Shown: piece after piece, positions 4,744 through 59,030 of the stretch
How positions within the stretch are numbered: the first letter of the stretch is position 1
How the letters are laid out: each line of letters begins with the position of its first letter
IMG/VR virus record: IMGVR_UViG_3300008110_000030
Coordinates: 1-64,000 of that record
Strand: one strand, 5' to 3'
DNA length: 64,000 bases
Translations under genes and position numbers: made by a program
The notes under the pieces: generated by a model
Told to the model about the DNA's origin: nothing
Databases searched by the model: none
Seen by the model: only the letters and a program-made list of their open reading frames with translations

Positions 4744-4749
4744 GTAATT

Positions 4750-41451: not shown

Positions 41452-41499
41452 GGCACCGTTAAGGGCCTAATTTGATTCTTACTTTAAAAGGAGATTATC

Positions 41500-41934: not shown

Positions 41935-41939
41935 TTGGC

Positions 41940-41965
41940 AAAGGGGCCACTTGTGCCCCTTTGTT
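41940..41965 (+). terminator. Intrinsic terminator
   Basis: AAAGGGGC/GCCCCTTT stem followed by T-rich tract. Confidence 0.75.
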
Positions 41966-42006
41966 ATTTGTAGTATAATAAGTAAAAATAATATTTAGGA
42001 ACTTAA

Positions 42007-42309
42007 ATGGGTGAAATTGCTACCAAACAAAAAAGTCTAGTAACTACAGATCTAATTGAACCTAGAAAGTTCAAAGTGATTTTCTTTAATGATGATAAAA
42101 CTCCAATGGATTTTGTTATAGATTTGTTGATTAATTTATTCAATCATGACCAAACTAGTAGCAGTAAACTAACAATGGAAATTCACAATGAAGGGTCAGC
42201 AGTAGTTGGGATTTACCCTTATGAAATCGCCGAGCAAAAAGGAATTGAATCCACACACATTGCTCGTCAAGCAGGCTACCCATTATTGATTAAAGTTGAA
42301 TCGGAGTAA
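42007..42309 (+). CDS. clpS: ClpS N-degron adaptor
   Basis: KVIFFNDDKTPMDFV...IH.EG..VVG..P.EIAE.K...YPL. Confidence 0.92.
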   Translation: MGEIATKQKSLVTTDLIEPRKFKVIFFNDDKTPMDFVIDLLINLFNHDQTSSSKLTMEIHNEGSAVVGIYPYEIAEQKGIESTHIARQAGYPLLIKVESE

Positions 42310-42311
42310 CG

Positions 42312-42857
42312 ATGAGTTTACGAGAAATTACTAAAGATTTACATCACGAAGCAGAAATAACAAAATTTGCCAAGTTATTGCTAAGTGGAAAAATTGAAAA
42401 ATCTGATTATAAGAATTATCTATATAATCTAATGGCAGTATACGATCCAATCGAGTGGTACTGCAAACGTCAAGGTTTCCTTGACACAATGCCTACACTG
42501 CCAAGACTACATGCTATCCATGCAGACTTTGTAGAATTAGATGATGGCACATATTGTTATCTAACGCCAGCGGCTTTAGAATATCAAGCATACTTACATA
42601 AACTAGGCAATGATCCAGAACGTAAACATTTGGTTAAGGCGCATTTATATTGCCGCCATATGGGCGACCTATTCGGTGGTCAAATCATTAAGAAACAAGT
42701 AGCACACATTTCAAGTGGTAAATTTTACGACTTTGAAAATGCTGATGCTATGAAGATGTCTATTCGAGAAACACTCACAGATGATCTAGGAGATGAAGCT
42801 CGTGTGGCATTTGAATTTGCTATTAAGATGATGCGTGACTTATATGCAGGAGAGTAA
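42312..42857 (+). CDS. hemO: Heme oxygenase
   Basis: LRE.T...H..AE (axial His); AHLYCRHMGDLFGGQII. Confidence 0.9.
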   Translation: MSLREITKDLHHEAEITKFAKLLLSGKIEKSDYKNYLYNLMAVYDPIEWYCKRQGFLDTMPTLPRLHAIHADFVELDDGTYCYLTPAALEYQAYLHKLGNDPERKHLVKAHLYCRHMGDLFGGQIIKKQVAHISSGKFYDFENADAMKMSIRETLTDDLGDEARVAFEFAIKMMRDLYAGE

Positions 42858-43533
42858 AGTATGGGACACACTAATTGAGATCCAAGCTCTACTTGAGGAG
42901 TCGTTTGAAAAAACAGGAGTCGAAGTATTCGAACCTGGAATGGATCGTTTTAATCAACCTGGTTGGGTTAATCGTGTATGGTCTAGTGATAAGTATCGCC
43001 GGGCCCACGTTGATGTCGTTGATGCTAGGCTGACCAAAGGTCTTTGGATGATGCACTGTTGCATCTTCCCTCATACACACAATCCAGCACCAATTTACGG
43101 CTTTGATGTTATTGCTGGTAAGAACAAAATTACTGGTTGTTTCCACGACTATAGTCCTGCTGGCGACAAAAATCATCCTATGATAGAATGGTTTGGTCAA
43201 GAAGTTAGCAAGTTAGAGTGGCGCAGAGAACGAGCACTTCCTGATTGGGCTCAGCGTATTTTTACCAAGCACATGGTGGCGGCAGGCAATGTTCAAGATG
43301 AAACTGAGTTACAACAAATTACAGATCTTGCTAAAACTACAGTAGAACACTATCTCAGTACTGTTGCAGAAACTAATAATACAGTGCCTGATACTACATT
43401 TGAGCAAGACTACTACGCACAAAATCAAAAACAAAACCCACATACTCCTAGAGTTATGGTTAGTTTAGGGCTTTCAGAGGACGATGTCAAGCATTTCATA
43501 CAAGAATGTCTATTTCCCGAAATTGGTAAATAA
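42844..43533 (+). CDS. pcyX: Ferredoxin-dependent bilin reductase, PcyA/PcyX type
   Basis: RAHVDVVDAR..KGLWMMHCCIFP...PIYGFDVIAG..KITGCFHDYSP; LPDWAQRIF; QKQNPHT. Confidence 0.8.
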   Translation: MQESKVWDTLIEIQALLEESFEKTGVEVFEPGMDRFNQPGWVNRVWSSDKYRRAHVDVVDARLTKGLWMMHCCIFPHTHNPAPIYGFDVIAGKNKITGCFHDYSPAGDKNHPMIEWFGQEVSKLEWRRERALPDWAQRIFTKHMVAAGNVQDETELQQITDLAKTTVEHYLSTVAETNNTVPDTTFEQDYYAQNQKQNPHTPRVMVSLGLSEDDVKHFIQECLFPEIGK

Positions 43534-45315: not shown

Positions 45316-45390
45316 GTATTAATTTACTAAGCATTTAATTTATCGCTCTACTACCGTTAAATAATAATGACGGTAATCGGAGAGCGAGCA

Positions 45391-45936
45391 ATGAAAAAAC
45401 AAATGTATGCCTTTATGCTATTGGCATGGGTAAGTGCTATTCATTCGGCACCATTGAATGACTTTCAATTTAAAAGTCCTGCATTCAATGGAGTTGGTTA
45501 TAGTTCACATGTACTAACCATAGAAAATCAAGAACGTACACGTCAAAACGAACGTGCAGATAAACTACAGGCTGAAATTGACAAAGCAATTTCAGATAAG
45601 AAAAACACGAATCTTGCTAAGTTTGTTAGTAACTTAGAATCGCGTATCTACGCACAGATTAGCCAAAACGTAGCAACTGCTATGTTTGCCAATAATAATT
45701 GTACAGCAAGTAGCAACACAAACTGTTCAGGGAATATTGATTTCCAAGGAAACTATATTAGTTGGAGCAAGGTATTAAGCTCTGATGATTCAAACTGTTC
45801 TACAGCATATGGTTCTTGCATCATGTTGAGAATAGCAGATCCTACAGCAACGAACCCAACAACAGCACCTTGTAATTCTGATGGTGTATCTTGTATCTAT
45901 GTGCCACTAAGTTCATTCCAAATGCCAGGGAATTAA
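45391..45936 (+). CDS. csgF: Curli assembly protein CsgF-like
   Basis: Signal peptide then FQFKSPAFNG; F...LESRIYAQISQ; adjacent to csgG. Confidence 0.75.
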   Translation: MKKQMYAFMLLAWVSAIHSAPLNDFQFKSPAFNGVGYSSHVLTIENQERTRQNERADKLQAEIDKAISDKKNTNLAKFVSNLESRIYAQISQNVATAMFANNNCTASSNTNCSGNIDFQGNYISWSKVLSSDDSNCSTAYGSCIMLRIADPTATNPTTAPCNSDGVSCIYVPLSSFQMPGN

Positions 45937-45939
45937 CCC

Positions 45940-47190
45940 ATGAAAAAGACTATTATATCTTTGGCAATCGTAAGTATGCTTTCTGGCTGTGCAATTTTGC
46001 AGTCAACAGGAGAGTTTGATAAAACTCCAGAACTGACTACTCAGATGAAAGGTGTTAAGAAAGAGTTTGACACCATTCCAAGTCCATCAGCTGGTAGACC
46101 ATTAAGTGTTGCTGTATACAGTTTTACTGATAAAACGGGTCAACGTAGACCACAGGCTAATATTGCCAGTTTAAGTTCAGCAGTTACACAAGGCGCAGAA
46201 TCTTTTCTAATTCAAGCACTACAAAATGTAGGTCAAGGACAATGGTTTGATGTTGTAGAAAGAGTAGGCATTGATAACCTGACTAAAGAACGATTAATTA
46301 TTCGCCAGATGCGTGAAGCATACGAAGGTAAAGATGCTAAACCATTACTACCAATGCAGTTTGCAGGCATTATTATTGAAGGCGGCATTGTAGGCTATGA
46401 CTCTAGCACAACTAGTGGTGGTGTTGGACAACGTATTTTTGGTATTGGAAAACAAACACAATGGTCCACTGATAGGGTTACCGTAAGTTTACGAGCAGTT
46501 AGCGTAAACACTGGCAAAGTATTAGCCACAGTGACTACTCAAAAGACTATAATGAGTTCAGCAGACAGTGTGTCTGCATTAAAATTCTTTGATGCTGGAA
46601 CACAGGCGTTTGAAGCTGAGGCAGGTTTAACCATAAACGAGCCAGGTACATACGCTGTAAAGGCAACAATTGAAATGGCAGTAGTTGAATTAATTAAAGA
46701 AGGACAACGCAAGGGAGTATGGGATTACAAGACAGTGGTTAAAGAATCACCACCTGTATCAATCGCACCACCCCCACAGGCAGCTCCAGTGATTAGCAGT
46801 GAAGTAAGACAGAAAGAAGAAATTAAAGTAGAGGAGAAGAAAGATGTCGTGGTTCAATCACAAACCCAATCCGAAACGAAAACAGAAGCCGCACCCAGTG
46901 CCTCCACAGAAGTAAAAAAAGAGACACTTAAGGACGGTGCAGAACTAAAAGTAACAGCAATGCAAACTGGGGTAAAACCAACAATAGATCTTTTTGGTGC
47001 TAGGTATTTAAAAGAAGATTCATTTGTATATAAAGAAGCAAACGAAAAAAGTCAGCGAACTTGGCTATTAAAGAAAGGCACTGAATTATACATTATTACT
47101 CCAGGACCAGAAGGTTGGCACCAAGTAAGAGACGCAGAGAAGCGTAAAGGTTTTGTCAAGAATTCAGTACTCGGAACTGACAAACCATAA
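45940..47190 (+). CDS. csgG: Curli secretion channel CsgG with C-terminal extension
   Basis: Lipobox LSGC; AVYSF.DKTGQ; SAVTQGA; WFDVVER.G..NL..ER.IIR. Confidence 0.92.
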   Translation: MKKTIISLAIVSMLSGCAILQSTGEFDKTPELTTQMKGVKKEFDTIPSPSAGRPLSVAVYSFTDKTGQRRPQANIASLSSAVTQGAESFLIQALQNVGQGQWFDVVERVGIDNLTKERLIIRQMREAYEGKDAKPLLPMQFAGIIIEGGIVGYDSSTTSGGVGQRIFGIGKQTQWSTDRVTVSLRAVSVNTGKVLATVTTQKTIMSSADSVSALKFFDAGTQAFEAEAGLTINEPGTYAVKATIEMAVVELIKEGQRKGVWDYKTVVKESPPVSIAPPPQAAPVISSEVRQKEEIKVEEKKDVVVQSQTQSETKTEAAPSASTEVKKETLKDGAELKVTAMQTGVKPTIDLFGARYLKEDSFVYKEANEKSQRTWLLKKGTELYIITPGPEGWHQVRDAEKRKGFVKNSVLGTDKP

Positions 47191-47288
47191 AGATAGCGAG
47201 TACGGAGGAACGTAGAGGTAAACTTAATTTAATGGCCGTAGGCCAAGGAGCGTGGTTGGAGAATATATAATCCAATCGTGTATAAAAG

Positions 47289-48263
47289 ATGGACAAAAGA
47301 AACAAAGGCGTTGGTAAGTTGTCGAGAAAATTACTTACAATTCTGGTGTTGTCTGGAATGGCAACATTGGGTCATGCGGCTGATAACAGCATCTACATTG
47401 ATCAAGCAGGTGACAACAGCACAATTACTATGACACAAGATGGTGCTGGTAATAAAGTAAAAGGCATTTTGTCAAGCGGTGTTGCTGGAGGTACTACAGA
47501 TCCTGCTAAACTTACTGGCAATGCTCAAACAGTTAACATTGAGCAAACTGGTGCAACCAACGTCTTGGCATTGGGAGTTAATTCAACGCAAGGTGGTTTA
47601 GTACAAGGATATGCTAACATAGGTGTGAATTTAAACTATCAAGTAAGTGGTGGTGGAAACACTGGTTATATTAACATTAATAACAATGGTCAAGGAACTG
47701 CAATTGGTAATGTGGTCAGTATTATACAAAGTGGTGGCGGTGGAACAGCAACACTTAACATGACTGGAACTAGTAATCAATTGACTGTTGGTCAGAGTGG
47801 TGGTGCTAACAATACATTTATAGGCACAATCAATGCTGACGAAACTGTAGCAACTGTAAGTAACACACTAGGTGGTGGTAATACTACAACATTAGACATG
47901 ACTGGAAATAAAGGTCAAGTTAGTGTTACAACAACAGGCACTACAAATACAACAAGCGTGACACAAAGCGCATTTGGATCAACTGGTGCGCAAGTACTAG
48001 TTAACATTGATGGTTCAGGCAATAATACAACTGTTACACAAAGTGGTATGTATGATCACTATGCTAGTCTAAGTGTAGTTGGCAGTGGTAATAACTTTAC
48101 AATAGCACAGTCTGGTGGTTCTGCAACTGGACATTCTGCTACATTGTCTGTAACTGGAAGTACAAACACTGTTGGTATCACACAGCAAGGATCAGTTGCC
48201 AATCTAACCAACATGGCAGTAAATGGTAGTAATAATACATACACTATACTACAGAAAAATTAA
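47289..48263 (+). CDS. Curlin-repeat protein (CsgA/CsgB-like)
   Basis: Signal peptide; many Q-x-G-x-x-N repeats. Confidence 0.8.
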   Translation: MDKRNKGVGKLSRKLLTILVLSGMATLGHAADNSIYIDQAGDNSTITMTQDGAGNKVKGILSSGVAGGTTDPAKLTGNAQTVNIEQTGATNVLALGVNSTQGGLVQGYANIGVNLNYQVSGGGNTGYININNNGQGTAIGNVVSIIQSGGGGTATLNMTGTSNQLTVGQSGGANNTFIGTINADETVATVSNTLGGGNTTTLDMTGNKGQVSVTTTGTTNTTSVTQSAFGSTGAQVLVNIDGSGNNTTVTQSGMYDHYASLSVVGSGNNFTIAQSGGSATGHSATLSVTGSTNTVGITQQGSVANLTNMAVNGSNNTYTILQKN

Positions 48264-48272
48264 GAGGTTGGA

Positions 48273-49379
48273 ATGAACGTATGGCTAGCAATATTACTTG
48301 TTTCGTTACTGCACACATCAAATGCTCAAGCGGCAATTGGTAAAGTAACGGAACAGGTAAACATACCTCCTACAATTCAACGAGATAAATCAACCCTAAC
48401 TGGCAGCAAAGGTACAGGTGTTGAGATGAATGACTCAATTAAAACTTCTCAAGGCAAAGTGGGCATTACCTTTGAAGATGATACCCGTGTACAAGTAAAC
48501 GAAAACAGTAAACTGGTTATTGATGACTTTGTTTATGATCCAAAAACCAAAGCAGGTAAACTAGGTGCTAAGATTGCACTAGGTACTGTACGCTATGCTA
48601 GTGGACAGATTGCTAAGAATAGTCCACAGAGTGTAAACCTTAATACACCTAGTGCTACTGTAGCAGTTCGTGGTACGGACTTTACAGCCACAGTAGACGA
48701 ACTTGGTGAGAGTACAATTATTCTACTACCTAGTTGTCCTAACGATAGACCTACACGTACAGTAAAAGACATTGAAGCAAGTTGTAAAACTGGTGTAATT
48801 GAAGTCAGCAATGACGTGGGCACTGTAATATTAAATCAACCGTTCCAAGTAACTAAAGTACAGAGCAGAACACAACCTCCTACTCCACCTAAAACACTGG
48901 AGTTATCTGAAATGGCTATCAGTAACTTGATAATTTTGAGTCCTCCAAAAGAAGTTAAGCAAGCTCAAGAAGAACAGCGTAAAGTGTTTAATCCTTTAGA
49001 CATAGATTTTCTAAAAGAAAAAGGATTAGAGAACTGGCTTGATATGCAAGCTGGAGTTATCTACGAAGACAAACTAAAGAAAAACTTTTTGGATAACGAT
49101 TTCCTAGCCAGCTTATTTGACATTATTGGTAATCAATTGGATCAAAAATTCTTAGACCCAGTAGATCCTGTACTACCTGACTACAAGAGAGCTACTGGTA
49201 TCGTTGCCTACAAAGATGATACGAGTATTGAATTGTGTAGAGATAGTGGTGCTGACATACAGTGTGTTAAAACTCCTTTAACACAGAACAGTACAATCTT
49301 CCAAACACAAGGTAGTTTAGAGTTTAAGAATCGTGTTAATCAAGGCGGTAATACTATCATTACCTTAATACAAAGATGA
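48273..49379 (+). CDS. FecR-domain periplasmic protein
   Basis: ITFEDDTRVQVNENSKLVI; TPSATVAVRGTDF. Confidence 0.85.
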   Translation: MNVWLAILLVSLLHTSNAQAAIGKVTEQVNIPPTIQRDKSTLTGSKGTGVEMNDSIKTSQGKVGITFEDDTRVQVNENSKLVIDDFVYDPKTKAGKLGAKIALGTVRYASGQIAKNSPQSVNLNTPSATVAVRGTDFTATVDELGESTIILLPSCPNDRPTRTVKDIEASCKTGVIEVSNDVGTVILNQPFQVTKVQSRTQPPTPPKTLELSEMAISNLIILSPPKEVKQAQEEQRKVFNPLDIDFLKEKGLENWLDMQAGVIYEDKLKKNFLDNDFLASLFDIIGNQLDQKFLDPVDPVLPDYKRATGIVAYKDDTSIELCRDSGADIQCVKTPLTQNSTIFQTQGSLEFKNRVNQGGNTIITLIQR

Positions 49380-50644
49380 AACGTTTTATTTTAGGATTTG
49401 TAATCTTGTGGTGTGTATGTTTGAGTGCAATTGCTCAAGCCACGTCTTTTACTGATTTAAAATTTGGTCAATATCAGATTGCAGATTCTCAATGGGACGT
49501 TGGGGCATGTTTGTATACAAATACTTGTAATATTTACAGTACTCAACCAGGAACAATGTATCAAATACCTTGGTGGAACGGACAGTGGAACTGGCAATCT
49601 GGTCAGTATGTTAAATTTTTATTAAGTGGAATCTCTGGATATCCTTACACCGCAAATGTTTACAATAGTGACGGCAGTCTAGCAGGTAGTATAGGTAGTG
49701 GTAAAATTATTAACATGGGTGTTGATGCAAATGGTTATGCATTATTTTTCTTTGTAGGGACAGATGATAATACTGGACAACTTTTTAGTACAAATTACGG
49801 ATTTACAGGTACGGGCGGATATTCTTGGACTGGTACATTAAATCCAACAATTTCACAAGTTGACTCATTTTCTGTAAGTTACGGATCAACGACACCATTA
49901 AGTCCTGGTCAAACATTTACTGCTACCAGTTCAACTCCATCTGGACCAACAGTCTCAGGCGGAACTATAACACAGTCTAACGCTCCAAATAATCAAATTA
50001 TAGGCAGTGGAAGTGGTATTGGAATCAGCAACAATCAACAAAGTCGTGTAAACACTTGGAATAACGGTAGCAATCAAAATGCCAATAACTATTTGTATAT
50101 TGATCAAGTAAGTGGTTCCTACAATGACGTAACTATTACACAAACAACTAGTACAGGTAAGAACAAAATAGAAGCGACAATAGGCGGAACTGGAAATAAT
50201 GTTATTAACGCAACACAATCTGGTACTAACTATCTTAAGTTAGATGTCACTGGTAATAACAACAATGTAACAAGTCAACAGTCTAATAATAGTTTGACTA
50301 GCAATTATAAAGAAACTACAGTTAATGGTAATAGTAATATTATTAGTACTAACCAAAAAGACAATTCTAATCACATAATGTTTACCACAGTAACTGGTAA
50401 CAGTAATAGTGTGACAGCAGTACAAGAAGGCACAGGTGGTCACTATTTAGAAAATAAACTTACTGGCAACAATAATAGTGTACTTGCTAATCAGAGCGGA
50501 AATACAAAAAATAACGCCACTATAGATTTAACTAATAATGGCGGAGCCGCCAGTGTTGATTTACAACAATCTGGCGGGAAATCTTTTAGTATTATTCAAA
50601 GTTGTACCAATCCTGCAGGATGTAGTACTGTGGTAAGACAATAA
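49376..50644 (+). CDS. Secreted protein with C-terminal curlin repeats
   Basis: Signal peptide; G-N-x-N / Q repeats from about residue 240. Confidence 0.78.
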   Translation: MKRFILGFVILWCVCLSAIAQATSFTDLKFGQYQIADSQWDVGACLYTNTCNIYSTQPGTMYQIPWWNGQWNWQSGQYVKFLLSGISGYPYTANVYNSDGSLAGSIGSGKIINMGVDANGYALFFFVGTDDNTGQLFSTNYGFTGTGGYSWTGTLNPTISQVDSFSVSYGSTTPLSPGQTFTATSSTPSGPTVSGGTITQSNAPNNQIIGSGSGIGISNNQQSRVNTWNNGSNQNANNYLYIDQVSGSYNDVTITQTTSTGKNKIEATIGGTGNNVINATQSGTNYLKLDVTGNNNNVTSQQSNNSLTSNYKETTVNGNSNIISTNQKDNSNHIMFTTVTGNSNSVTAVQEGTGGHYLENKLTGNNNSVLANQSGNTKNNATIDLTNNGGAASVDLQQSGGKSFSIIQSCTNPAGCSTVVRQ

Positions 50645-51334
50645 TTATACCTTAAATAACCATTTCTTTGTTATGTGTAATCTTGCCTTGTTGTACTGAA
50701 CAGCAGTAATAACTAGAGCAACTGCCCAAGGTACAATAGTAGCGGCCCAAGGAACTAATCCTGCCCACCACGTAGCCATTAATGGTTCTTTCATCAACAT
50801 TAACATAGCCACGGCAAACAAGACAAACGATCCTACAAATACTGTGTCAGGATATTTTTCTAGTATCTTACTAACTAGGCCAGCACCAAACAAAATAATT
50901 GGCACACTGATTAACAAGCCAGCAATTACTAAAACAAAACTTCCATTAGCGGCTGCGGCAATACCTAGTGCGTTGTCTATGCCCATAACAGCATCGGCAA
51001 CTACGATAGTACCAATAGCACCCCAAAAGGTGTCCTTGGCTTCTATGTTATGCTCGTCATGTGTAAATGCTAACTTCCAACCAATCCATAACAATGCAAG
51101 AGCACCTATTGCTCTAAGTCCAGGAATTAGTAATAGGTAAGTTAATGCGGCTACAGATATGAAGCGTATTGCGATGGCACCAAAGGTACCCCAAAAGATT
51201 GCTTTCTTGCGCAAGTGATCTGGTAGTTTATTAGCTGCCATTCCAATAACAAGAGCGTTATCGCCAGCTAATACAATGTCTATCAAAATGATAGCTAAAA
51301 ATGCCCAAAGGGCCTGAAGCGTAAAGAGTTCCAT
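50645..51334 (-). CDS. TerC/Alx family membrane protein (YjbE type)
   Basis: DIVLAGDNALVIGMA; ADAVMGIDNAL; GLLISVPII. Confidence 0.92.
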   Translation of the reverse strand: MELFTLQALWAFLAIILIDIVLAGDNALVIGMAANKLPDHLRKKAIFWGTFGAIAIRFISVAALTYLLLIPGLRAIGALALLWIGWKLAFTHDEHNIEAKDTFWGAIGTIVVADAVMGIDNALGIAAAANGSFVLVIAGLLISVPIILFGAGLVSKILEKYPDTVFVGSFVLFAVAMLMLMKEPLMATWWAGLVPWAATIVPWAVALVITAVQYNKARLHITKKWLFKV

Positions 51335-51348
51335 AATTTACCTTAAAG

Positions 51349-51441
51349 TTATGGTCTCACCTCTTTGTCCATGCACCGGATACTGTTGTATCGTGTTGAC
51401 GGCACATAAAACCAACACCAGTTGGTTAGTTACTCCCCAAA
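51349..51441 (-). promoter_or_regulatory. yybP-ykoY (Mn2+) riboswitch
   Basis: TTTGGGGAGTA...CGTCAACACG...GGTGAGACCAT in the TerC 5' UTR. Confidence 0.82.
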
Positions 51442-51443
51442 GA

Positions 51444-51456
51444 TATTTAGTAAATA
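51444..51456. promoter_or_regulatory. Back-to-back late promoter boxes
   Basis: tatttagtaaata gives TAAATA on both strands. Confidence 0.55.
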
Positions 51457-51460: not shown

Positions 51461-52006
51461 ATGCGAGCAAAAGAATTCATTATAGAAGCAGAAGCTAGCG
51501 ATGCTGAGTTAACGCAACGTTACGGCAAGTTTGAACCCGAAGATAAACCAATGTTACCAACCACAAGAGTTGGTGGTGCGCCTTCCCCAACTTTATGGAC
51601 AGCCTACGAAGTAATTCGAAATATTTTAGGCAAAGATAAAGTTACAGACGACGATGATGAATTAGCTCCTGGAATGTACTATGTGTATCAAAGCTTAGGC
51701 TCTCCTATGTTTAAAGACACAGGTGATGGAGTAGGTAGTATCAATCTTCCCAACTTAGATAGTACTAGTGCTCGAGATGTTGCCATGGCTGCTCACGAAG
51801 CATACCATGCTTATGTACACAATAAAAGTCTTGGCGGAGTTGCTTATGCCAATGAAAAGATTATTAACAAACTAGCAGAAAAGTGGTTGAGAAATCACTT
51901 GTCAGGACCAGCATTACACACTGCACTAGAAAAAATAGTGGGCAGTAGAATCAGTTATGGTCCAAACCATATGCCTAACAGTTCAACAATAGATAAAAGA
52001 AAATGA
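51461..52006 (+). CDS. Hypothetical protein with HExxH motif
   Basis: Starts MRAKEF; AAHEAYHA. Confidence 0.7.
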   Translation: MRAKEFIIEAEASDAELTQRYGKFEPEDKPMLPTTRVGGAPSPTLWTAYEVIRNILGKDKVTDDDDELAPGMYYVYQSLGSPMFKDTGDGVGSINLPNLDSTSARDVAMAAHEAYHAYVHNKSLGGVAYANEKIINKLAEKWLRNHLSGPALHTALEKIVGSRISYGPNHMPNSSTIDKRK

Positions 52007-52299
52007 TTAAGAAAATCTTATTAATTCTATTGGTCTGCTTACCCAGTCTAGTTAACGCCCAATTCCAATACGATTATCCATTGTTGTGCGACCGCACTGC
52101 AAAGATCATACAAAGTCTCGGGGACGACTGGAAAGAAACGCTGACTTGGAGTGGAAAACACATCAGTGACAACAGTGTCTACAGTCTGTGGACCAATGAA
52201 AAAAATGGATCATGGACCCTATTAAAGATGACTTCAGAAGTTTCGTGTATACTTGGAACGGGTAGCGAATCAAAAGTAAACTTAGGAATGCCTATATAA
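52003..52299 (+). CDS. Small secreted protein
   Basis: Signal peptide, two Cys. Confidence 0.7.
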   Translation: MIKKILLILLVCLPSLVNAQFQYDYPLLCDRTAKIIQSLGDDWKETLTWSGKHISDNSVYSLWTNEKNGSWTLLKMTSEVSCILGTGSESKVNLGMPI

Positions 52300-54341
52300 T
52301 GATTAAGAAAATTTTATTAAGCCCTTGGACTGCTCTATTAACACTGGCGTTAGTAGTGGGCATACGTGCGGCAGACCCCACATTCGTTGAAAGCGTAAGA
52401 CTACGCTACTTTGATACCTTAATTACTGCTAAGGAACCAACATTCAACAATATTGTAACAGTAAATATTGATGAAGCTAGCTTGGACAAGTATGGACAAT
52501 GGCCATTGCCAAGGACTGAATATGCCAAAATTATACGAGATCTATATCAGAGGGGAGCAGGACTTGTTGTACTTAATGTGCTCATGCCAGAGTCAGACCG
52601 TACAGGTGGCGACAGTGCGTTGGGTCAAACTCTAAAAGAATTTCCAGTAGTGCTAGGGTCAGTTCCTAGCAACAAAACAAAAAATACTCCACGTGCCCCA
52701 GGGTCAGCAGTATTAGGCCCAGAGCATTTGGATCAAATTATTCGGTATCCAGGTCTAATTGCCAATGTGCCATTGCTAGAAAATTCGGCGGCAGGAGTTG
52801 GCATAGTTTCAACACTACCTGAAGTAGACGGTGTTAATCGTAGATTACCTCTTATCGTCACTGTTGATGGTAAATTATATCCAAGCATAGCTATGGAAAC
52901 GCTCCGCATTGCGGCTGGCGATAGCACCTTTCAAGTAAAACTATTTGAGGGCGGTGTTGAAAAAATGCGTATACCTAAATTTGGTCCTGTTACTACAGAC
53001 AATTTGGGTCGTATATGGATTGACTGGAGTCAGCAAAATAGAAACTTTAGTTTAACTACATTACCAAAAGATTTAGAAGGTGCAATTGTCATCGTAGGCC
53101 CAACAGCCGCAGGTATTAGTAATCCAGTACCAACAAGTAAAGGGGCAGTATTTCCACACGAAGTACAAGCCGCAGTTATTGGTACAATGGTAAACGGAGT
53201 TGTAATTGAACGTCCTGATTATGCAGATGGCGCAGAGATTATAGCATTATTAGCATTTGGTTTATTATTAATTTTCTTATCGAGGTGGACTTATGTTGGC
53301 ATTTGTGCTACTGTGGTTATTGTTGGTGCCGTCGTTCCTGGTACTATGTACGCTTTCACTAATTGGCTCATCCTATCAGACGCGACTGCAATCACGTTTG
53401 GGCTTATTATCGTTGCTCTTCATACTTATGGCGTTAAGTTTGTAAGCGAGTTCTTACAGAAGCAGGCAATTAAGAAACAATTTGAGGGATATGCAAGTCC
53501 TACAGTAGTTAAACTACTACAAGAAAATCCAGACATCATCAAGAACGGAACTAAACGTGAAGTATCTATAGTGTTTTCAGACCTACGTGGATTTACTCCA
53601 TTAGGTGAAAGTTTTGGTGATGACGTTAAAGGTCTAACTGAAGTTATGAACGGCTACATGGATGCTATTACACAACCTGTACTAGATGCAGATGGTATGA
53701 TTATCAAGTACATTGGTGATGCAAGTATGCATATTCATAATGCACCTATTGATGATCCTGACCATGCTAAGACAGCAGTAGCTACTGGACTTAAAATGTT
53801 GAAAGCTGTTAAAAAGTTCAGCATTGAATTAGAGGCTAAAGGACGTCCAGGAGTCAAGATGGGTGCTGGTATCAATACTGGTTTAGGTTATATTGGCGAG
53901 ATGGGATCAACTCGTCGTCATTCATATGATGTACTAGGTGATGCAGTGTCAACAGCCGCACGTATTGAAAGCAAGTGTAAAGAATATGGATGCGTATTAT
54001 TAGTTGGCGGTGCAACTGTGGAACAATGTGGTGATGATTTCTTCTTCTTAAAAGTAGATGACCTGGCTGTTAAGGGTAAGAGTGTGGGAGTTGCTATCTA
54101 TACAGTATTAGATGATGTTACTGCTGAGTATCATGTGAGTAAAAAGATACATGATGCTATGCATAATGCATATAGATCACAAAAATTTAACATGGCTATC
54201 AGTATGTGCAAACAACTTAGAGATCAGTTTGACAGTAGATTGACTGGTTACTATGACATGTGGATAGAACGTTGCGAGTTCCAATTAACACAAACATTGC
54301 CTGAGGATTGGAACGGCGTGTTTATAGCAACTTCTAAATAA
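52299..54341 (+). CDS. CHASE2-domain class III adenylate/guanylate cyclase
   Basis: V.IDEASL..YGQWP.PR (CHASE2); TM helices; FSDLRGFT, KYIGDA, GINTG, DVLGDAVSTAAR. Confidence 0.92.
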   Translation: MIKKILLSPWTALLTLALVVGIRAADPTFVESVRLRYFDTLITAKEPTFNNIVTVNIDEASLDKYGQWPLPRTEYAKIIRDLYQRGAGLVVLNVLMPESDRTGGDSALGQTLKEFPVVLGSVPSNKTKNTPRAPGSAVLGPEHLDQIIRYPGLIANVPLLENSAAGVGIVSTLPEVDGVNRRLPLIVTVDGKLYPSIAMETLRIAAGDSTFQVKLFEGGVEKMRIPKFGPVTTDNLGRIWIDWSQQNRNFSLTTLPKDLEGAIVIVGPTAAGISNPVPTSKGAVFPHEVQAAVIGTMVNGVVIERPDYADGAEIIALLAFGLLLIFLSRWTYVGICATVVIVGAVVPGTMYAFTNWLILSDATAITFGLIIVALHTYGVKFVSEFLQKQAIKKQFEGYASPTVVKLLQENPDIIKNGTKREVSIVFSDLRGFTPLGESFGDDVKGLTEVMNGYMDAITQPVLDADGMIIKYIGDASMHIHNAPIDDPDHAKTAVATGLKMLKAVKKFSIELEAKGRPGVKMGAGINTGLGYIGEMGSTRRHSYDVLGDAVSTAARIESKCKEYGCVLLVGGATVEQCGDDFFFLKVDDLAVKGKSVGVAIYTVLDDVTAEYHVSKKIHDAMHNAYRSQKFNMAISMCKQLRDQFDSRLTGYYDMWIERCEFQLTQTLPEDWNGVFIATSK

Positions 54342-55818: not shown

Positions 55819-55893
55819 CTGGCGATAGTTCAACGGATAGAACAGTAGCCTTCTAAGCTATTAATCCAGGTTCGATTCCTGGTCGCCGGACCA
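55819..55893 (+). tRNA. tRNA-Arg(TCT)
   Basis: GTAGC-CTTCTAA-GCTAT, CCA; TAAATA at 55807-55812. Confidence 0.93.
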
Positions 55894-55910
55894 CTTTTAG
55901 AAAGTTTGAA

Positions 55911-56744
55911 ATGAAAATCAATCTAGTCAGCGACATGCACATCAACTTCCAGGACATTAATTTGCCAGGCGGTGATGTACTCATTATGGCTGGGGATATC
56001 ATGGAAGCTGGTCACCTACGTTTGGCTGACAATGCTAAACAAAATACATTTATTGCTGATAGATATCGTAGATTCATCAATGAAGAATTGTGCAAGTATC
56101 GTCATGTGATTTATATTGCAGGCAATCATGAGCACTATAGCAACAGCTATGACGACACACATATTCGAATAGGTCGTGAACTGCCAGACAACGTACACTT
56201 CTTAGAAGCAGAATCAATCAAGATTGATGACGTGTGGTTCTTTGGTGGCACATTTTGGACTGATATGAACAAAGGCGATCCTATCACTGCCAGTGTGCTT
56301 AAACAACGCATGGCTGATTTTAGTGGTTCAATTAAATTTGGTAACAGTATCAAAGTTGATACCGCTTGGGGAGACAGTTATTACACTAGTAAGTTCACTC
56401 CTGCTTATGCTAAAGGCGTGTTTCACGAAACAATGGAAAAATTAAAAACTTTTTTAGAAGCTCATCCTGATGAAAAAGTTGTTGTAGTAAGTCATCACGC
56501 ACCAACTGAGTTGAGTGTTAATGAATATTACAAAAATGAATTTCATATGAATGGTGGATATCACAGCAGACTAGGTGATTTTATTTTAGACCATCCCAAC
56601 ATTAAGGTATGGTGTCATGGTCACATGCACGATCCAGTTGACTACACTATTGGAACTACTCGTGTACTGAGTAACCCACGTGGTTACAAAGGATATGAAC
56701 ACCAAGCTGAAGTGTTTGATCCTAATTTTAGTTTTGACGTATAA
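55911..56744 (+). CDS. Calcineurin-like metallophosphoesterase
   Basis: SDMH, AGD, GNHE, SHHAP, HGHMH. Confidence 0.92.
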   Translation: MKINLVSDMHINFQDINLPGGDVLIMAGDIMEAGHLRLADNAKQNTFIADRYRRFINEELCKYRHVIYIAGNHEHYSNSYDDTHIRIGRELPDNVHFLEAESIKIDDVWFFGGTFWTDMNKGDPITASVLKQRMADFSGSIKFGNSIKVDTAWGDSYYTSKFTPAYAKGVFHETMEKLKTFLEAHPDEKVVVVSHHAPTELSVNEYYKNEFHMNGGYHSRLGDFILDHPNIKVWCHGHMHDPVDYTIGTTRVLSNPRGYKGYEHQAEVFDPNFSFDV

Positions 56745-56755
56745 AGGCAACAGAC

Positions 56756-57385
56756 ATGGGATTTGTTACTGACGGAGATTTATCTAAAATATTTGGACGT
56801 ATTGACAAAAAACTGTCTGTTGTTCATGACAAGGACAAGTCTTTAGTTGAAATACTTGATCTTGATATCGCTAGCGGGCCTTGGCTTGCTGGCGGTGCTG
56901 TACTTACTTGGCTTAGTGGTAACCCAGTTGGCGACAGTGACTTTGATATATTTTTCAAAGATTTGCGACAGTTTGATGAAGTGTTTGGCAGACTCATGCG
57001 CAACCATGCTAGTATCATCTACACCAGTGAAAACGCATTGACCTTGCATCTTGTTATTGATGACGATCTCAAACGAATCCAATTGATTCGAAAAAATTAT
57101 TTTGATTCTGCAAAAGATGTAATTGATCATTTTGACTTTACTATTTGTCAACTGGTAACTGATGGCTACCAAATAGTTGGTGCTGACCACACATTTGAAC
57201 ATATAAAAGAAAAACGAATTGTATCTGTTGGACCTGCCAAACGATCTATTGTAAAAAGAATTGTCAAATATGTTAGTTATGGATACACTGTTGATTGTGA
57301 TTTAATGCAATCAATTCTCGACAATCCTGAAGAGTATGATTGGTCATTTAATAACATAGATGAAAATTATGAAAACGCATTCTAA
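56756..57385 (+). CDS. Nucleotidyltransferase (poly(A) polymerase/CCA head-domain-like)
   Basis: WLAGGAV...DSDFDIFF; FDFTIC. Confidence 0.78.
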   Translation: MGFVTDGDLSKIFGRIDKKLSVVHDKDKSLVEILDLDIASGPWLAGGAVLTWLSGNPVGDSDFDIFFKDLRQFDEVFGRLMRNHASIIYTSENALTLHLVIDDDLKRIQLIRKNYFDSAKDVIDHFDFTICQLVTDGYQIVGADHTFEHIKEKRIVSVGPAKRSIVKRIVKYVSYGYTVDCDLMQSILDNPEEYDWSFNNIDENYENAF

Positions 57386-57752
57386 TTACCACAGTTGGAG
57401 TTTGCTAGATCCACGTCCAGTATTTTATCTAGACGAAAAGACACATACTGAATTGTGCGTATGGAATGGCATTTACATGACCAAAAAACAAGCTCTGCTG
57501 ATTGCTTGTGAAAAGTATTTGTCAATTTGGCCCACCCCAACGATGAAAAATCGTAGTTATCAAGAGTTTATTACTGCATATTTTAGTAATGCATTTGGTC
57601 ACAGAGAGTGGGACGGCATTATTTCTAAACTAAACAACGGACAAGATCATTACAATCTTTTGGTAAAAATGCTAAAACCTCATACACAAAAGATGGCAAC
57701 ATACTCTGGTCCAGAGGTTTTATCTTGGTTCAATCTTCATAAACAAAAATAG
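57360..57752 (+). CDS. Hypothetical protein
   Basis: Packed ORF. Confidence 0.6.
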   Translation: MKIMKTHSNYHSWSLLDPRPVFYLDEKTHTELCVWNGIYMTKKQALLIACEKYLSIWPTPTMKNRSYQEFITAYFSNAFGHREWDGIISKLNNGQDHYNLLVKMLKPHTQKMATYSGPEVLSWFNLHKQK

Positions 57753-57760
57753 ACTATATT

Positions 57761-57979
57761 ATGACTCGTTATACAGCAGAAGTTAAATACGACAAAGAGA
57801 CAGACGAACACTACTTGCAATTTGATCCAGAAGTTCTATCTCAAATGGGTTGGGACTTTGGCGATACCATAATTTGGAAGGATAATAATGATGGGTCATT
57901 CACGCTTACGAAAAAAGTGGATAACCACCCCAGTGACCAGACTTCAAATGTTCCAACTGATGGAGCCTCTGAAGAGTAA
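57761..57979 (+). CDS. AbrB/MazE-like DNA-binding protein
   Basis: LQFDPEVLSQMGWDFGDTIIW. Confidence 0.65.
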   Translation: MTRYTAEVKYDKETDEHYLQFDPEVLSQMGWDFGDTIIWKDNNDGSFTLTKKVDNHPSDQTSNVPTDGASEE

Positions 57980-58574
57980 ACTAATTGGTTTTCCTTTGTA
58001 TAAAGGAGAAATTAGTTCTATAATTGGTGAATTGATTAGTAGTAAATTTAGAGCAGATATTATACAAGCTGAAGCAAGTCAAGTAGACATTGGCGATTTA
58101 AATGTAAGTGCTTGTTATGATCCAGAATTGGATAGTATGGATCGTCCTTGTATTGAAATTGTACTAGTTTATAATCCTTACGATAATTTTTTAATTTTTG
58201 ATCAAGAATTATTTTCCACAATAACCAAAAGACTTTGTGATGCTCTATCACATGAGCAAATTCATCAACAACAGCACAGAGCAAGATTTTGGGAAGATGT
58301 AGACTATGATGATCCAGATGATGATGAAGCATATTTGGCTAACAAAGATGAGATTGATGCTTATAGTCACAACATTGCTAACGAACTTTTGGACTTTGCA
58401 GACCTAAATCAGGTATTGACATTAATACAATATCCAAGTAAAATAAAGATTGAACACAGCGTAAACCTTTGGGTTTACATGCAGACATTTAACAACGATA
58501 CAAATCATCCAGTAATCAAAAGATTACTAAAAAAAGTTACAAAAATACTACCTAAGGTAGTTTTACAAAGATAA
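57948..58574 (+). CDS. Hypothetical protein with HExxH motif
   Basis: SHEQIHQQQ...Y....DEIDAY; start uncertain. Confidence 0.65.
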   Translation: MFQLMEPLKSKLIGFPLYKGEISSIIGELISSKFRADIIQAEASQVDIGDLNVSACYDPELDSMDRPCIEIVLVYNPYDNFLIFDQELFSTITKRLCDALSHEQIHQQQHRARFWEDVDYDDPDDDEAYLANKDEIDAYSHNIANELLDFADLNQVLTLIQYPSKIKIEHSVNLWVYMQTFNNDTNHPVIKRLLKKVTKILPKVVLQR

Positions 58575-58691
58575 ATAGAGTACTATGAAGACAACAGCAT
58601 ATCAATTTGCATCCAGTAAGAAGATTCCTTCTTCAGTTGTCTACTTGTCTTTAATCCCACGAATACGATTACAACACTCTTAAAAAGTTAA

Positions 58692-58792
58692 GGGAGTGTT
58701 GCTAATATTGGCCTAAGGGCAGAGCTTATACCTCTGTAAGCACCGTCTAGATAAGGCGGCGAATGTGGGTTCGATTCCCGCCACTCCTACCA
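58692..58792 (+). tRNA. tRNA-Ile(TAT) with very long variable arm
   Basis: CAGAG-CTTATAC-CTCTG; extra arm CCGTCT/AGGCGG; acceptor GGGAGTG/CACTCCT; CCA. Confidence 0.82.
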
Positions 58793-58798
58793 AAAATT

Positions 58799-58883
58799 GC
58801 CTGCATGGTGAAATCGGTAAACACAGCAGACTTAAAATCTGCCGGAGAAATCCTTCCCAGTTCGATTCTGGGTGCAGGCACCA
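58799..58883 (+). tRNA. tRNA-Leu(TAA)
   Basis: GCAGA-CTTAAAA-TCTGC, CCA. Confidence 0.93.
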
Positions 58884-58893
58884 AAATACATAG

Positions 58894-58922
58894 TTGACAA
58901 AAATAACAAACACATATATAAT
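58894..58922 (+). promoter_or_regulatory. sigma70 promoter
   Basis: TTGACA-17 nt-TATAAT. Confidence 0.85.
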
Positions 58923-58945
58923 ATAGAACACTTTACAAGGACATT

Positions 58946-59030
58946 GCGACTGTGGTGAAATAGGTAGACACAAGAGACTTAAAATCTCTCGCCCACAGGC
59001 ATCCCGGTTCGATTCCGGGCAGTCGCACCA
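58946..59030 (+). tRNA. tRNA-Leu(TAA), second copy
   Basis: AGAGA-CTTAAAA-TCTCT, CCA. Confidence 0.93.

What the first reader, a model, noticed from the sequence alone, without database searches (positions are those of the whole stretch)
50645..51456. Mn2+ riboswitch-controlled TerC cassette inside a phage, under a late promoter box
Seen: clear yybP-ykoY motifs in the 5' UTR, a TAAATA box 2 nt upstream, back-to-back with an opposite TAAATA, and a stop codon abutting the convergent curlin gene with zero gap. Known: yybP-ykoY senses Mn2+ and regulates TerC/Alx genes; TerC proteins are linked to Mn export and metalation of secreted proteins. Inference: a metal-sensing viral gene, possibly supporting the neighbouring secretion system.
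Basis: partly seen in the sequence, partly recalled or inferred. Interest (0 to 1): 0.65.

Follow-up and report, generated by a model that had tools for sequence, protein, structure and literature searches.

The report
Phage manganese riboswitch lacking one stem
A giant T4-like freshwater phage carries a host-derived TerC metal-exporter gene behind a conserved RNA leader that is a trimmed version of the bacterial manganese riboswitch, apparently letting the virus make the exporter only when manganese is high.

Summary
Rfam's Mn2+ riboswitch model (RF00080) gives no hit in the window at any threshold.

The 90-nt leader at 51352-51441 (-) is nonetheless a real, conserved structured RNA. 62 distinct homologues from viral contigs keep 94% of its base pairs. 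19 of 28 pairs show compensatory changes.

It has the L1 (GGGGAGUA ... GAGACC) and L3 (CG-UCAACAC) signatures of the yybP-ykoY riboswitch, plus helices P1.1, P1.2, P2 and P3. Stem P4 is replaced by a conserved 7-nt linker, which makes a three-way junction.

Sister phages and the likely host genus Polynucleobacter carry the four-stem form upstream of the same TerC. RF00080 recognises those at E = 1e-5 to 3e-8, below its cut-off. A model built from the phage three-way form finds the host leaders as single genome-wide hits.

The 3' strand of P1.1 (CCAUAA) can instead pair with UUAUGG, which includes the start codon. This predicts a translational ON switch.

A conserved TAAATA box lies 4-7 nt upstream, and the genome encodes T4-type gp23 and gp55 homologues. 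Late timing and a functional link to the neighbouring curli genes remain unproven. Mn2+ binding is untested.

The parts
51444..51449 (-). TAAATA box, candidate T4-type (gp55-dependent) promoter core for the TerC leader; 5 nt upstream of GGGG
   Evidence: Present 4-7 nt upstream of GGGG in all 42 distinct phage leaders, whatever the upstream gene. Host Polynucleobacter leaders have TATAGAAT further upstream instead. A gp55 homologue is in the genome. There is no sigma-70-type site here. Function as a promoter is inferred.
51451..51456 (+). Opposite-strand TAAATA box, 4 nt before the ATG (51461) of the divergent gene 51461-52006
   Evidence: 14 of 236 ORFs in the genome have a TAAATA ending 0-10 nt before the start codon.
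51352..51441 (-). Aptamer: P4-less (three-way-junction) variant of the yybP-ykoY Mn2+ riboswitch
   Evidence: Model R1, built from 35 other phage loci, scores 94.5 bits, E=2e-25, with one copy per genome.
51431..51438 (-). GGGGAGUA: first two G = 5' strand of switch helix P1.1 (pair with C51354/C51353); remainder = L1 5' strand
   Evidence: Invariant in all aligned leaders. It matches the upper-case Rfam consensus GGGGAGUAG.
51410..51427 (-). P2 hairpin (7 bp, loop UGGU)
   Evidence: 5 of 7 pairs show compensatory changes; 97.6-99.1% of cells are paired.
51369..51409 (-). P3: P3.1 (10 bp), asymmetric loop L3 (UCAACAC, 51399-51393), P3.2 hairpin (5 bp, loop AACA)
   Evidence: 7 of 10 P3.1 pairs and 4-5 of 5 P3.2 pairs covary. 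CGUCA, C and G of L3 and its flanks are invariant.
51362..51368 (-). ACAAAGA linker that stands where stem P4 lies in canonical riboswitches
   Evidence: The four-stem relatives (L030, L045, L069, Polynucleobacter) have a hairpin here. C, A, A and G of the linker are invariant in the three-way form.
51355..51361 (-). P1.2 3' strand (GGU, pairs with ACU 51430-51428) and L1 3' strand (GAGA)
   Evidence: P1.2 covaries: AU/GC and CG/UA swaps.
51331..51354 (-). Expression platform: CCAUAA (3' strand of P1.1 and extension) pairs with UUAUGG (start codon 51334-51332 plus G); the SD AAGG (51344-51341) lies inside the hairpin
   Evidence: The hairpin is predicted in 26 of 27 distinct leaders, with compensating variants such as CCAUUUUAA/UUAAAAUGG and CUGUAAU/AUUAUGG. 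ON and OFF folds score -23.5 and -24.0 kcal/mol. There is no terminator in the leader.
50645..51334 (-). TerC-family membrane protein, YjbE subfamily, 229 aa
   Evidence: Pfam PF03741 E=4e-40. TIGR03717 191.5 bits, above its cut-off. Both DN motifs are invariant. RNA-library contigs 100% identical lie at 50666-50871 and 51158-51368.
49376..50644 (+). Convergent neighbour: N/Q/T-rich repeat protein, curlin-like; its stop abuts the TerC stop

Best explanation
The TerC gene and its leader were most likely shared by horizontal transfer between this T4-like freshwater phage lineage and Polynucleobacter. The leader is a yybP-ykoY-type Mn2+ riboswitch that has lost stem P4 in most phage copies, giving a three-way junction. 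It keeps the two metal-pocket loops, L1 and L3.

Proposed mechanism:
1. Transcription starts a few nucleotides downstream of the phage TAAATA box, at or just before GGGG (inferred).
2. At low Mn2+, the weak P1.1 helix (two G:C pairs plus a variable extension) is open. Its 3' strand CCAUAA pairs with UUAUGG, burying the start codon and holding the Shine-Dalgarno inside the hairpin. TerC is not translated.
3. When Mn2+ docks L1 against L3, P1.1 is stabilised. CCAUAA is withdrawn from the sequestering hairpin, and TerC is translated.
4. TerC then exports Mn2+ from the infected cell's cytoplasm.

Shown here: the RNA structure, its homology, the alternative pairing, and the TerC family assignment.
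Inferred: metal binding, the direction of the switch, the transcription start, and the benefit to the phage.
For: Structure:
- 36 leaders: 90.5% of cells paired, 18 pairs with compensatory changes, 0 of 500 shuffles as good, 27-41% paired when the partners are slid.
- 62 distinct leaders: 94% paired, 19 of 28 pairs compensatory, 0 of 500 shuffles. This alignment was fitted to the model, which favours the structure.

Homology chain:
- RF00080 hits the four-stem phage leaders: L069 at 42.9 bits (E=3e-8), L061 at 23.1, L058 at 22.3, L045 at 18.3.
- RF00080 has a single genome-wide match in three Polynucleobacter genomes, exactly upstream of the TerC homologue: 26-32 bits, E=2e-5 to 4e-7.
- Model R1, built from three-way phage leaders, gives best genome-wide hits on those same Polynucleobacter sites at 46-53 bits, E=1e-9 to 6e-12 (one genome also had a chance-level hit, E=0.07). 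It hits the window at 94.5 bits.

Gene association:
- The TerC is TIGR03717. That is one of the two domains most commonly regulated by Mn2+ riboswitches (PMC5737381).
- The closest cellular TerC is from Polynucleobacter, at 63% identity. Phage and Polynucleobacter TerC form one clade with support 98.

Switch:
- The start-codon-sequestering hairpin shares its 5' strand with P1.1 in 26 of 27 distinct leaders, with compensatory variants.
- The two folds are near-isoenergetic.
- There is no terminator in the leader.
- P1.1, nucleated by two G:C pairs, is the known switch helix of this class. L1 and L3 form the metal pockets (PMC11087558).

Loss where unneeded: L038-L040 have most of the aptamer deleted. 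This shows the element decays when not maintained.

Expression hint: contigs from two RNA libraries, 100% identical to the window, cover only TerC within the 3 kb laid. One extends 34 nt into the leader.
Against: - RF00080 gives no hit on the window even at E<=10.
- Stem P4 is missing. In solved structures P4 stacks under P3 (PMC11087558), so the docking geometry may differ.
- R1 did not find the RF00080-passing riboswitch in a Pigmentiphaga genome. The link to canonical members therefore runs through intermediates that score below Rfam's cut-off.
- The minimum-free-energy fold of the leader alone is unremarkable (z = -1.4).
- The outer part of P1.1 is poorly paired: 59-78% of cells.
- No ligand, reporter or transcription-start data exist.
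- Contigs in RNA libraries can derive from DNA.
Confidence: 0.66

Rival explanations
1. The leader is a conserved structured RNA descended from the Mn2+ riboswitch but it now senses something else: another divalent cation (Fe2+, Co2+, Ni2+, Cd2+), or pH as in the E. coli alx leader. Loss of P4 would have changed the pocket geometry.
For: P4 is absent and is replaced by a linker with invariant bases. That could mean a new tertiary contact. RF00080 scores the window at nothing. The alx member of the family is also reported to respond to alkaline pH (PMC9603457 abstract).
Against: The L1 and L3 sequences that build the metal pockets are invariant and match the canonical consensus. The regulated genes are still TerC-family proteins of both YjbE and Alx type. 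Four-stem and three-way leaders are interchangeable on near-identical TerC genes.
Confidence: 0.15
2. The leader is a ligand-blind relic. After losing P4 it no longer switches and serves only as a fixed 5' structure, for mRNA stability or a constant damping of translation.
For: A defining stem is missing. P1.1 is very short if transcription starts at GGGG. Many phage TerC genes work without any riboswitch: 17 of the 80 IMG/VR loci, and cultured Pseudomonas, Rhizobium and Acinetobacter phages.
Against: A relic would not keep L1 and L3 invariant while the helices change by compensation across TerC identities of 54-93%. Nor would it keep the mutually exclusive P1.1/start-codon pairing with compensating variants. 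Where the element really was abandoned, it was deleted (L038-L040).
Confidence: 0.12
3. Regulation is mainly transcriptional, through Rho-dependent or other premature termination within the leader or early coding region. Ligand binding would act by exposing or hiding the ribosome site only indirectly.
For: The E. coli mntP riboswitch combines translational control with Rho-dependent termination (PMC11647493 abstract).
Against: There is no intrinsic terminator in the leader. The conserved alternative helix involves the start codon itself. Whether host Rho acts on T4-type late transcripts here is unknown.
Confidence: 0.05
4. The resemblance is chance and there is no RNA element, as the negative Rfam result would suggest.
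For: Searches are negative. The fold z-score is -1.4.
Against: Covariation in 19 of 28 pairs, 0 of 500 shuffles as good, and collapse of pairing on sliding. R1 hit at 94.5 bits. The three-way-specific pattern occurs in 69 viral contigs.
Confidence: 0.01

Closest known systems
yybP-ykoY (Mn2+) riboswitch, Rfam RF00080; structurally characterised in L. lactis yoaB, X. oryzae and E. coli mntP
   Same: - L1 (GGGGAGUA ... GAGACC) and L3 (CG-UCAAnAC) signatures.
- The P1.1 switch helix nucleated by two G:C pairs.
- The order of helices P1.2, P2, P3.1 and P3.2.
- Position in the 5' UTR of a TerC-family gene.
- ON-switch logic, in which the 3' strand of P1.1 is shared with a repressing helix.
   Different: - No P4 stem: a three-way instead of a four-way junction, with a conserved 7-nt linker in its place.
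- No score against RF00080.
- Carried by a virus and preceded by a phage TAAATA box instead of a host promoter.
- The aptamer begins within about 5 nt of the predicted transcription start.
Polynucleobacter yjbE/terC leader (loci L081-L088, L102)
   Same: The downstream TerC is 63% identical. The leader is recognised by the same models. Its L1, P2, P3 and L3 layout is nearly identical to phage leaders L045, L061 and L069.
   Different: It has the P4 hairpin and a host TATAGAAT-type -10 element about 16 nt upstream instead of TAAATA. The three-way-specific pattern was not found in 401 genomes of the host's GTDB family.
E. coli mntP and alx translational Mn2+ riboswitches
   Same: Control at the level of translation initiation rather than by an intrinsic terminator (PMC11647493 and PMC9603457 abstracts).
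   Different: Those leaders are much longer and are four-way junctions. Here the start codon itself pairs directly with the P1.1 3' strand, within a 24-nt platform.
Riboswitches already reported in T4-like aquatic phages (glutamine riboswitch upstream of ssrA in Methylophilales phage Melnitz, PMC9004378)
   Same: A riboswitch carried by a T4-like aquatic myophage that also carries csgF/csgG curli genes.
   Different: Different class and ligand. My literature searches found no report of a metal-sensing riboswitch in a phage. That absence is only as good as the library searched.
terC RNA motif (RF03067)
   Same: It lies upstream of TIGR03717/TIGR03718 genes (PMC5737381).
   Different: No match at E<=10. 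It is an unrelated structure.

Membership tests
yybP-ykoY Mn2+ riboswitch (RF00080) | Scores at or above Rfam's gathering threshold (45 bits) with the family covariance model | tested here: not met
   No hit at gathering score, at E<=10 on 301 nt, or genome-wide. The model is also sub-threshold on the four-stem host leaders (26-32 bits) and passes its cut-off in only 2 of the 9 control genomes in which it registers a hit.
yybP-ykoY Mn2+ riboswitch (RF00080) | Conserved L1 internal loop (5' GGGGAGUAG, 3' A/G-AGACC) | tested here: met
   GGGGAGUA at 51438-51431 and GAGACC at 51358-51353. Both are invariant across the aligned leaders and match the Rfam consensus.
yybP-ykoY Mn2+ riboswitch (RF00080) | Conserved asymmetric L3 loop (CG-UCAAnAC) between P3.1 and P3.2, holding the adenine that contacts Mn2+ | tested here: met
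   UCAACAC at 51399-51393. CGUCA is invariant. Which adenine corresponds to A41 was not established.
yybP-ykoY Mn2+ riboswitch (RF00080) | Helices P1.2, P2, P3.1 and P3.2 supported by covariation | tested here: met
   19 of 28 pairs have compensatory changes, 94% of cells are paired, and 0 of 500 shuffles do as well.
yybP-ykoY Mn2+ riboswitch (RF00080) | Four-way junction with P3 stacked on P4 | tested here: not met
   Only 7 nt (ACAAAGA, 51368-51362) lie between P3.1 and P1.2, so no hairpin is possible. Four-stem relatives have one there.
yybP-ykoY Mn2+ riboswitch (RF00080) | P1.1 switch helix whose 3' strand is shared with a repressing structure | tested here: met
   G51438/G51437 pair with C51353/C51354, and these are invariant. 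CCAUAA can pair instead with UUAUGG in 26 of 27 leaders.
yybP-ykoY Mn2+ riboswitch (RF00080) | Homology to accepted members | tested here: inconclusive
   The chain through sub-threshold intermediates is strong. However, R1 does not reach the one RF00080-passing example tested, from Pigmentiphaga.
yybP-ykoY Mn2+ riboswitch (RF00080) | Selective Mn2+ binding and Mn2+-dependent gene control | not testable with these tools
   Needs biochemistry or reporter assays.
TerC family, YjbE subfamily (PF03741 / TIGR03717) | Profile score above the curated cut-off over the full domain | tested here: met
   PF03741: 137.8 bits against a cut-off of 27.8. TIGR03717: 191.5 bits against 134.8.
T4-type late promoter (TATAAATA at -10, no -35, gp55-dependent) | TATAAATA octamer about 6 nt upstream of the transcription start, and gp55 encoded by the phage | tested here: inconclusive
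   Only the TAAATA core is conserved, and the two bases before it vary. A gp55 homologue is present (E=1.3e-7), as is gp23. No sigma-70 site is found. The gp23 gene itself is preceded by CTAAAATAAT, not TAAATA. The transcription start and timing are unknown.
terC RNA motif (RF03067) | Match to the family model | tested here: not met
   No match at E<=10.

The most novel reading that the evidence does not exclude
This may be a virus-borne, naturally minimised class of Mn2+ riboswitch. It is a P4-less three-way junction found in 69 viral contigs and in none of 401 sampled genomes of the host's GTDB family. It would be transcribed from a phage TAAATA promoter so that the RNA begins at the aptamer's first nucleotides. 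It gates translation of two different TerC-family exporters, of YjbE and Alx type. If it binds Mn2+, it would be the first metal-sensing riboswitch shown in a virus. It would also be a natural experiment showing that the P3-P4 coaxial stack is dispensable for Mn2+ sensing.
Probability: 0.5. Interest if true: 0.75.

Novelty: new variant of a known kind. Interest (0 to 1): 0.62.

Why it matters
- **Phage biology.** Riboswitch-controlled auxiliary genes in phages are rare, and I found no report of a metal-sensing one. Here a phage appears to have taken both a host metal exporter and its sensor. It swapped the host promoter for its own and trimmed the sensor. That would mean the virus reads the infected cell's Mn2+ status directly.
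- **RNA structure.** The four-way junction is treated as the architecture of this riboswitch class. A widespread, strongly conserved three-way form offers a ready-made minimal aptamer for testing what P4 contributes.
- **Annotation.** The current Rfam model misses this form entirely. It also under-scores the host's canonical-looking leaders. Mn2+ riboswitches are therefore probably under-counted in freshwater bacteria and their phages.

Tried and rejected
- **Rfam.** Three searches over the window and genome were all negative for RF00080 and RF03067. I treat this as a limit of the model, not as absence, because.
- **Cultured phages, DNA level.** A DNA search of the region against 50,697 cultured phage records found no match.
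- **Cultured phages, TerC genes.** Four cultured phages with TerC (Pyxpy02, REC1, RHph_I1_18, vB_AciJM_313) have the gene packed in an operon. The upstream gaps are 3-78 nt and there is no Rfam hit at E<=1. The riboswitch is not a general feature of phage TerC genes.
- **TAAATA as an enriched hexamer.** Rejected: there are 45 copies against 89 expected. Only its position is informative.
- **Pairing of the 5' spacer with the linker.** In the window, CUUUG could pair with CAAAG of the linker, and this appears in the minimum-free-energy fold. It is not conserved in other loci, so I dropped it.
- **Second covariance model.** I aligned bacterial four-stem leaders (A4) but did not build a model. MAFFT could not align P2-P4 between the two genera. 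A Polynucleobacter-only model would merely repeat in reverse.
- **Single loss of P4 on the TerC tree.** Not supported. Three-way and four-stem leaders are interleaved on a quick tree. This suggests either repeated loss or exchange of leaders by recombination. The shared linker sequence favours one origin plus recombination, but I did not test that.
- **TerC as a dedicated helper of the curli genes.** The context is shared by only about 12-14 of 80 loci.
Full report
**1. What is at the coordinates**

The minus strand carries a 229-aa ORF at 50645-51334.
- It matches Pfam TerC at E=4e-40.
- It matches NCBIfam TIGR03717, the 'R_switched_YjbE' subfamily, at 191.5 bits against a cut-off of 134.8.
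- Its stop codon (50647-50645) touches the stop of the convergent + strand ORF 49376-50644 with no gap.

Upstream of the ATG lies a 109-nt untranslated stretch, followed by TAAATA at 51449-51444. One base further on, the opposite strand reads TAAATA at 51451-51456. That copy is 4 nt before the ATG of the divergent gene at 51461.

**2. The proposed check fails, and why that is not the end of the matter**

Rfam 15 finds GOLLD RNA and 23 tRNAs in the window, but no Mn2+ riboswitch.
- A permissive scan of 301 nt around the leader, at E<=10, reports neither RF00080 nor the terC motif RF03067.
- A whole-genome scan is also empty.
- The leader's minimum-free-energy fold is not exceptional on its own (z = -1.4).

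The same model is weak elsewhere too.
- In the tool's 14 control genomes it 'rings' in nine but passes its own cut-off in only two.
- In three Polynucleobacter genomes its single hit, exactly upstream of the TerC homologue, scores only 26-32 bits against a cut-off of 45.

I therefore turned to comparative evidence.

**3. Comparative evidence for a structured RNA**

The TerC protein retrieves 80 IMG/VR loci at 63-93% identity.
- 42 distinct leaders carry GGGGAGTA about 100 nt upstream of the ATG, once per locus.
- 35 are of the window's short type.
- Seven are longer.

I aligned the window with the 35 short leaders (A1) and scored this structure: P1.1, P1.2, P2, P3.1, a 7-nt asymmetric loop, and P3.2.
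- 90.5% of cells are paired.
- 18 pairs carry compensatory changes.
- 0 of 500 column shuffles do as well.
- Pairing collapses to 27-41% when the 3' partners are slid by 1-3 columns.

A covariance model (R1) built from the 35 loci, without the window, scores the window at 94.5 bits (E=2e-25). It finds no second copy in the 214.6 kb genome.

Run over 77 sources, R1 gives 70 three-way-type hits at 69-103 bits. Of these, 62 rows are distinct.
- 94% of cells are paired.
- 19 of 28 pairs are compensatory.
- 0 of 500 shuffles do as well.

That alignment was fitted to the model, which favours the structure. The MAFFT-based result does not have this bias.

**4. What kind of RNA it is**

The invariant blocks are:
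- GGGGAGUA;
- CG-UCAACAC, followed by a hairpin and CGG;
- GAGACC.

These correspond to the upper-case consensus blocks of RF00080 (GGGGAGUAG and CGUCAACAUAC). They also fit the published architecture: two helical stacks whose internal loops L1 and L3 form the Mg2+ and Mn2+ pockets, and a P1.1 switch helix nucleated by two G:C pairs (PMC11087558).

The seven long phage leaders and the bacterial leaders have one more hairpin, P4, between the 3' strand of P3.1 and the 3' strand of P1.2. The window and its 34 short-type kin have only ACAAAGA there. This is too short to fold, and four of its bases are invariant. The element is therefore a three-way-junction derivative of a four-way-junction riboswitch.

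**5. Linking it to the known family**

- RF00080 recognises four-stem phage leaders: L069 at 42.9 bits (E=3e-8), then L061, L058 and L045 at 18-23 bits.
- The closest cellular TerC proteins are from Polynucleobacter, at 63% identity over the full length.
- Polynucleobacter leaders are nearly identical in layout to the phage four-stem leaders.
- RF00080's only match in each of three Polynucleobacter genomes is that leader, at E=2e-5 to 4e-7.
- R1, built from three-way phage leaders, finds the same sites as its best genome-wide hits at 46-53 bits. One of those genomes also gave a chance-level second hit (E=0.07).

Limitation: R1 does not reach the RF00080-passing riboswitch of a Pigmentiphaga genome. 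Membership therefore rests on a chain of intermediates, not on a direct match.

Loss of a peripheral stem has a bacterial precedent. One Burkholderiales hit (L293) appears to lack P2 while keeping P4.

**6. Expression platform**

The leader has no intrinsic terminator and no sigma-70-type promoter.

The 3' strand of P1.1 continues as CCAUAA (51354-51349). This is complementary to UUAUGG (51336-51331), which includes the start codon. The Shine-Dalgarno AAGG lies inside the hairpin.
- The hairpin is predicted in 26 of 27 distinct leaders.
- It is kept by matching changes such as CCAUUUUAA/UUAAAAUGG, CUGUAAU/AUUAUGG and CCAUUU/AAAUGG.
- With the aptamer core held fixed, the fold with P1.1 scores -23.5 kcal/mol and the fold with the sequestering hairpin scores -24.0 kcal/mol. 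A modest ligand-dependent stabilisation of P1.1 could tip this balance.

This is the logic of the known ON-switches of this class, applied to translation.

**7. Promoter box**

Every phage leader, three-way or four-stem, has TAAATA 4-7 nt before GGGG. This holds whether the upstream gene is divergent or co-directional. The Polynucleobacter leaders instead have a TATAGAAT-type element further upstream.

The genome encodes a T4-type major capsid protein (PF07068, 274.8 bits). It also encodes a homologue of T4 gp55, the late sigma factor (E=1.3e-7).

From general knowledge, T4 late promoters are TATAAATA at -10 with no -35 element. TAAATA is the core of that octamer. A start about 6 nt downstream would put the RNA's 5' end at the GGGG.

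This reading is plausible but unproven.
- The two bases before TAAATA vary.
- The hexamer is depleted overall: 45 copies against 89 expected.
- The capsid gene itself is preceded by CTAAAATAAT rather than TAAATA.

Across the genome, 14 of 236 ORFs have TAAATA ending 0-10 nt before the start codon. This suggests many near-leaderless messages. TerC, with its 109-nt leader, is an exception.

**8. Is it a phage, and which host?**

- The record is an IMG/VR virus contig of 214.6 kb, estimated at about 61% complete.
- Related contigs reach 357-364 kb.
- It carries gp23 and gp55 homologues.
- The 3-kb stretch occurs in lake and freshwater metagenomes from at least 14 studies.
- TerC of the phages and of Polynucleobacter forms one clade with support 98 on a quick tree. 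The direction of transfer is not resolved.

**9. Distribution**

- A pattern specific to the three-way form matches 69 viral contigs. It matches none of 401 sampled genomes of the host's GTDB family.
- A general Mn2+-riboswitch pattern matches 171 of those 401 genomes.
- Some viral contigs put the same three-way leader, TAAATA box and start-codon hairpin in front of a different TerC-family gene: a 313-317-aa Alx-type protein.
- 17 of the 80 TerC loci have no riboswitch at all.
- Three loci (L038-L040) have most of the aptamer deleted.
- TerC genes of cultured phages of Pseudomonas, Rhizobium and Acinetobacter lie inside operons without room for a riboswitch and give no Rfam hit.

**10. Relation to the curli genes**

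The window does encode several curli-related proteins:
- CsgF (45367-45936);
- CsgG (45940-47190);
- a Pfam curlin-repeat protein (47289-48263);
- a FecR-domain protein;
- a curlin-like repeat protein next to TerC.

Curli csgGF genes are already known in T4-like aquatic myophages (PMC7029224, PMC9004378).

Only about 12-14 of 80 related TerC loci share the CHASE2-cyclase/FecR/curlin-like neighbourhood. TerC proteins of B. subtilis metalate secreted Mn2+ enzymes at the Sec translocon (PMC12096827). A link to secretion is therefore conceivable, but nothing here shows it.

**11. Expression**

Within the 3 kb laid, contigs from two metatranscriptome libraries match at 100% identity.
- One lies at 50666-50871.
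- The other lies at 51158-51368.
- Both are in TerC, and the second reaches 34 nt into the leader.
- Neither run covers the neighbouring genes.

The tool warns that RNA libraries can contain DNA and that contigs cannot show transcript ends. This is only a hint.

**12. Verdict**

The leader is a genuine, selectively maintained riboswitch-like RNA homologous to the yybP-ykoY Mn2+ riboswitch. It differs in a defining structural feature and escapes the family's Rfam model. The best reading is a Mn2+-activated translational switch on a phage TerC exporter.

Ligand binding, transcription start, timing and benefit to the phage all remain to be tested. No alternative genetic code was used. Read laying was given 3,001 bases.

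Noticed in passing
window 787-1249 (-), with tRNA arrays at 209-4834 (-) and 55819-59027 (+): A GOLLD RNA (RF02032, 213.5 bits) has a tRNA embedded at 1117-1182. It sits in an array of about 20 tRNA genes. The window has 23 tRNA hits in all.
   Followed up: no
window 45367-50644 (+): A curli (type VIII secretion) module sits in a T4-like phage. It comprises CsgF, CsgG, a Pfam curlin-repeat protein, a FecR-domain protein and a second curlin-like N/Q-rich repeat protein. Published pelagimyophage and Melnitz modules were reported to lack identifiable fibre subunits (PMC7029224, PMC9004378). This one seems to have them.
   Followed up: partly
window 52299-54341 (+): A phage-encoded CHASE2 sensor fused to an adenylate/guanylate cyclase domain lies two small ORFs downstream of the gene divergent from TerC. 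It recurs next to TerC and the FecR-domain gene in about 12 related loci.
   Followed up: partly
window 39562-43533 (+): Hsp70/DnaK (865 bits), heme oxygenase and a ferredoxin-dependent bilin reductase are encoded in the same phage. The bilin genes are typical of cyanophages, although TerC points to Polynucleobacter.
   Followed up: no
whole genome G000; e.g. window 2050, 3774, 43527, 45358, 51451, 55524: TAAATA ends 0-10 nt before the start codon of 14 of 236 ORFs, with a peak at 5 nt. The hexamer is two-fold depleted overall. This suggests near-leaderless messages from a phage promoter.
   Followed up: partly
L030-L035, L047, L051, L056, L058 (long four-stem leaders): In these leaders the sequestered AUG opens an upstream ORF instead of TerC. 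It has 19 codons in L030 and 17 in L047, and it runs into the TerC start region in L056 and L058. In L030 its stop lies directly before the TerC ATG, which suggests coupling through a leader peptide.
   Followed up: partly
L038-L040, about 70 nt upstream of TerC: Most of the aptamer is deleted. TAAATA, the 3' part of the linker and the start-codon hairpin remain. These are natural riboswitch-loss derivatives.
   Followed up: no
L181:1892-1977, L244:2604-2687, also L194, L208, L235: The same three-way leader with its TAAATA box precedes a 313-317-aa Alx-type TerC-family gene in other large viral contigs. The leader is used as a module on two different genes.
   Followed up: partly
L293 (Burkholderiales genome G072:C3:3444-3515): This bacterial Mn2+-riboswitch-like leader seems to lack P2, with only a 4-nt linker, but keeps P4. 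It is the mirror image of the phage variant.
   Followed up: no
window 55911-56744 (+): A calcineurin-like metallophosphoesterase, a family that commonly uses Mn2+, is encoded 4.5 kb from TerC. No link was tested.
   Followed up: no
window 8014-9087 (-) and 13785-14807 (-): Two radical SAM domain proteins match phrog_1802.
   Followed up: no
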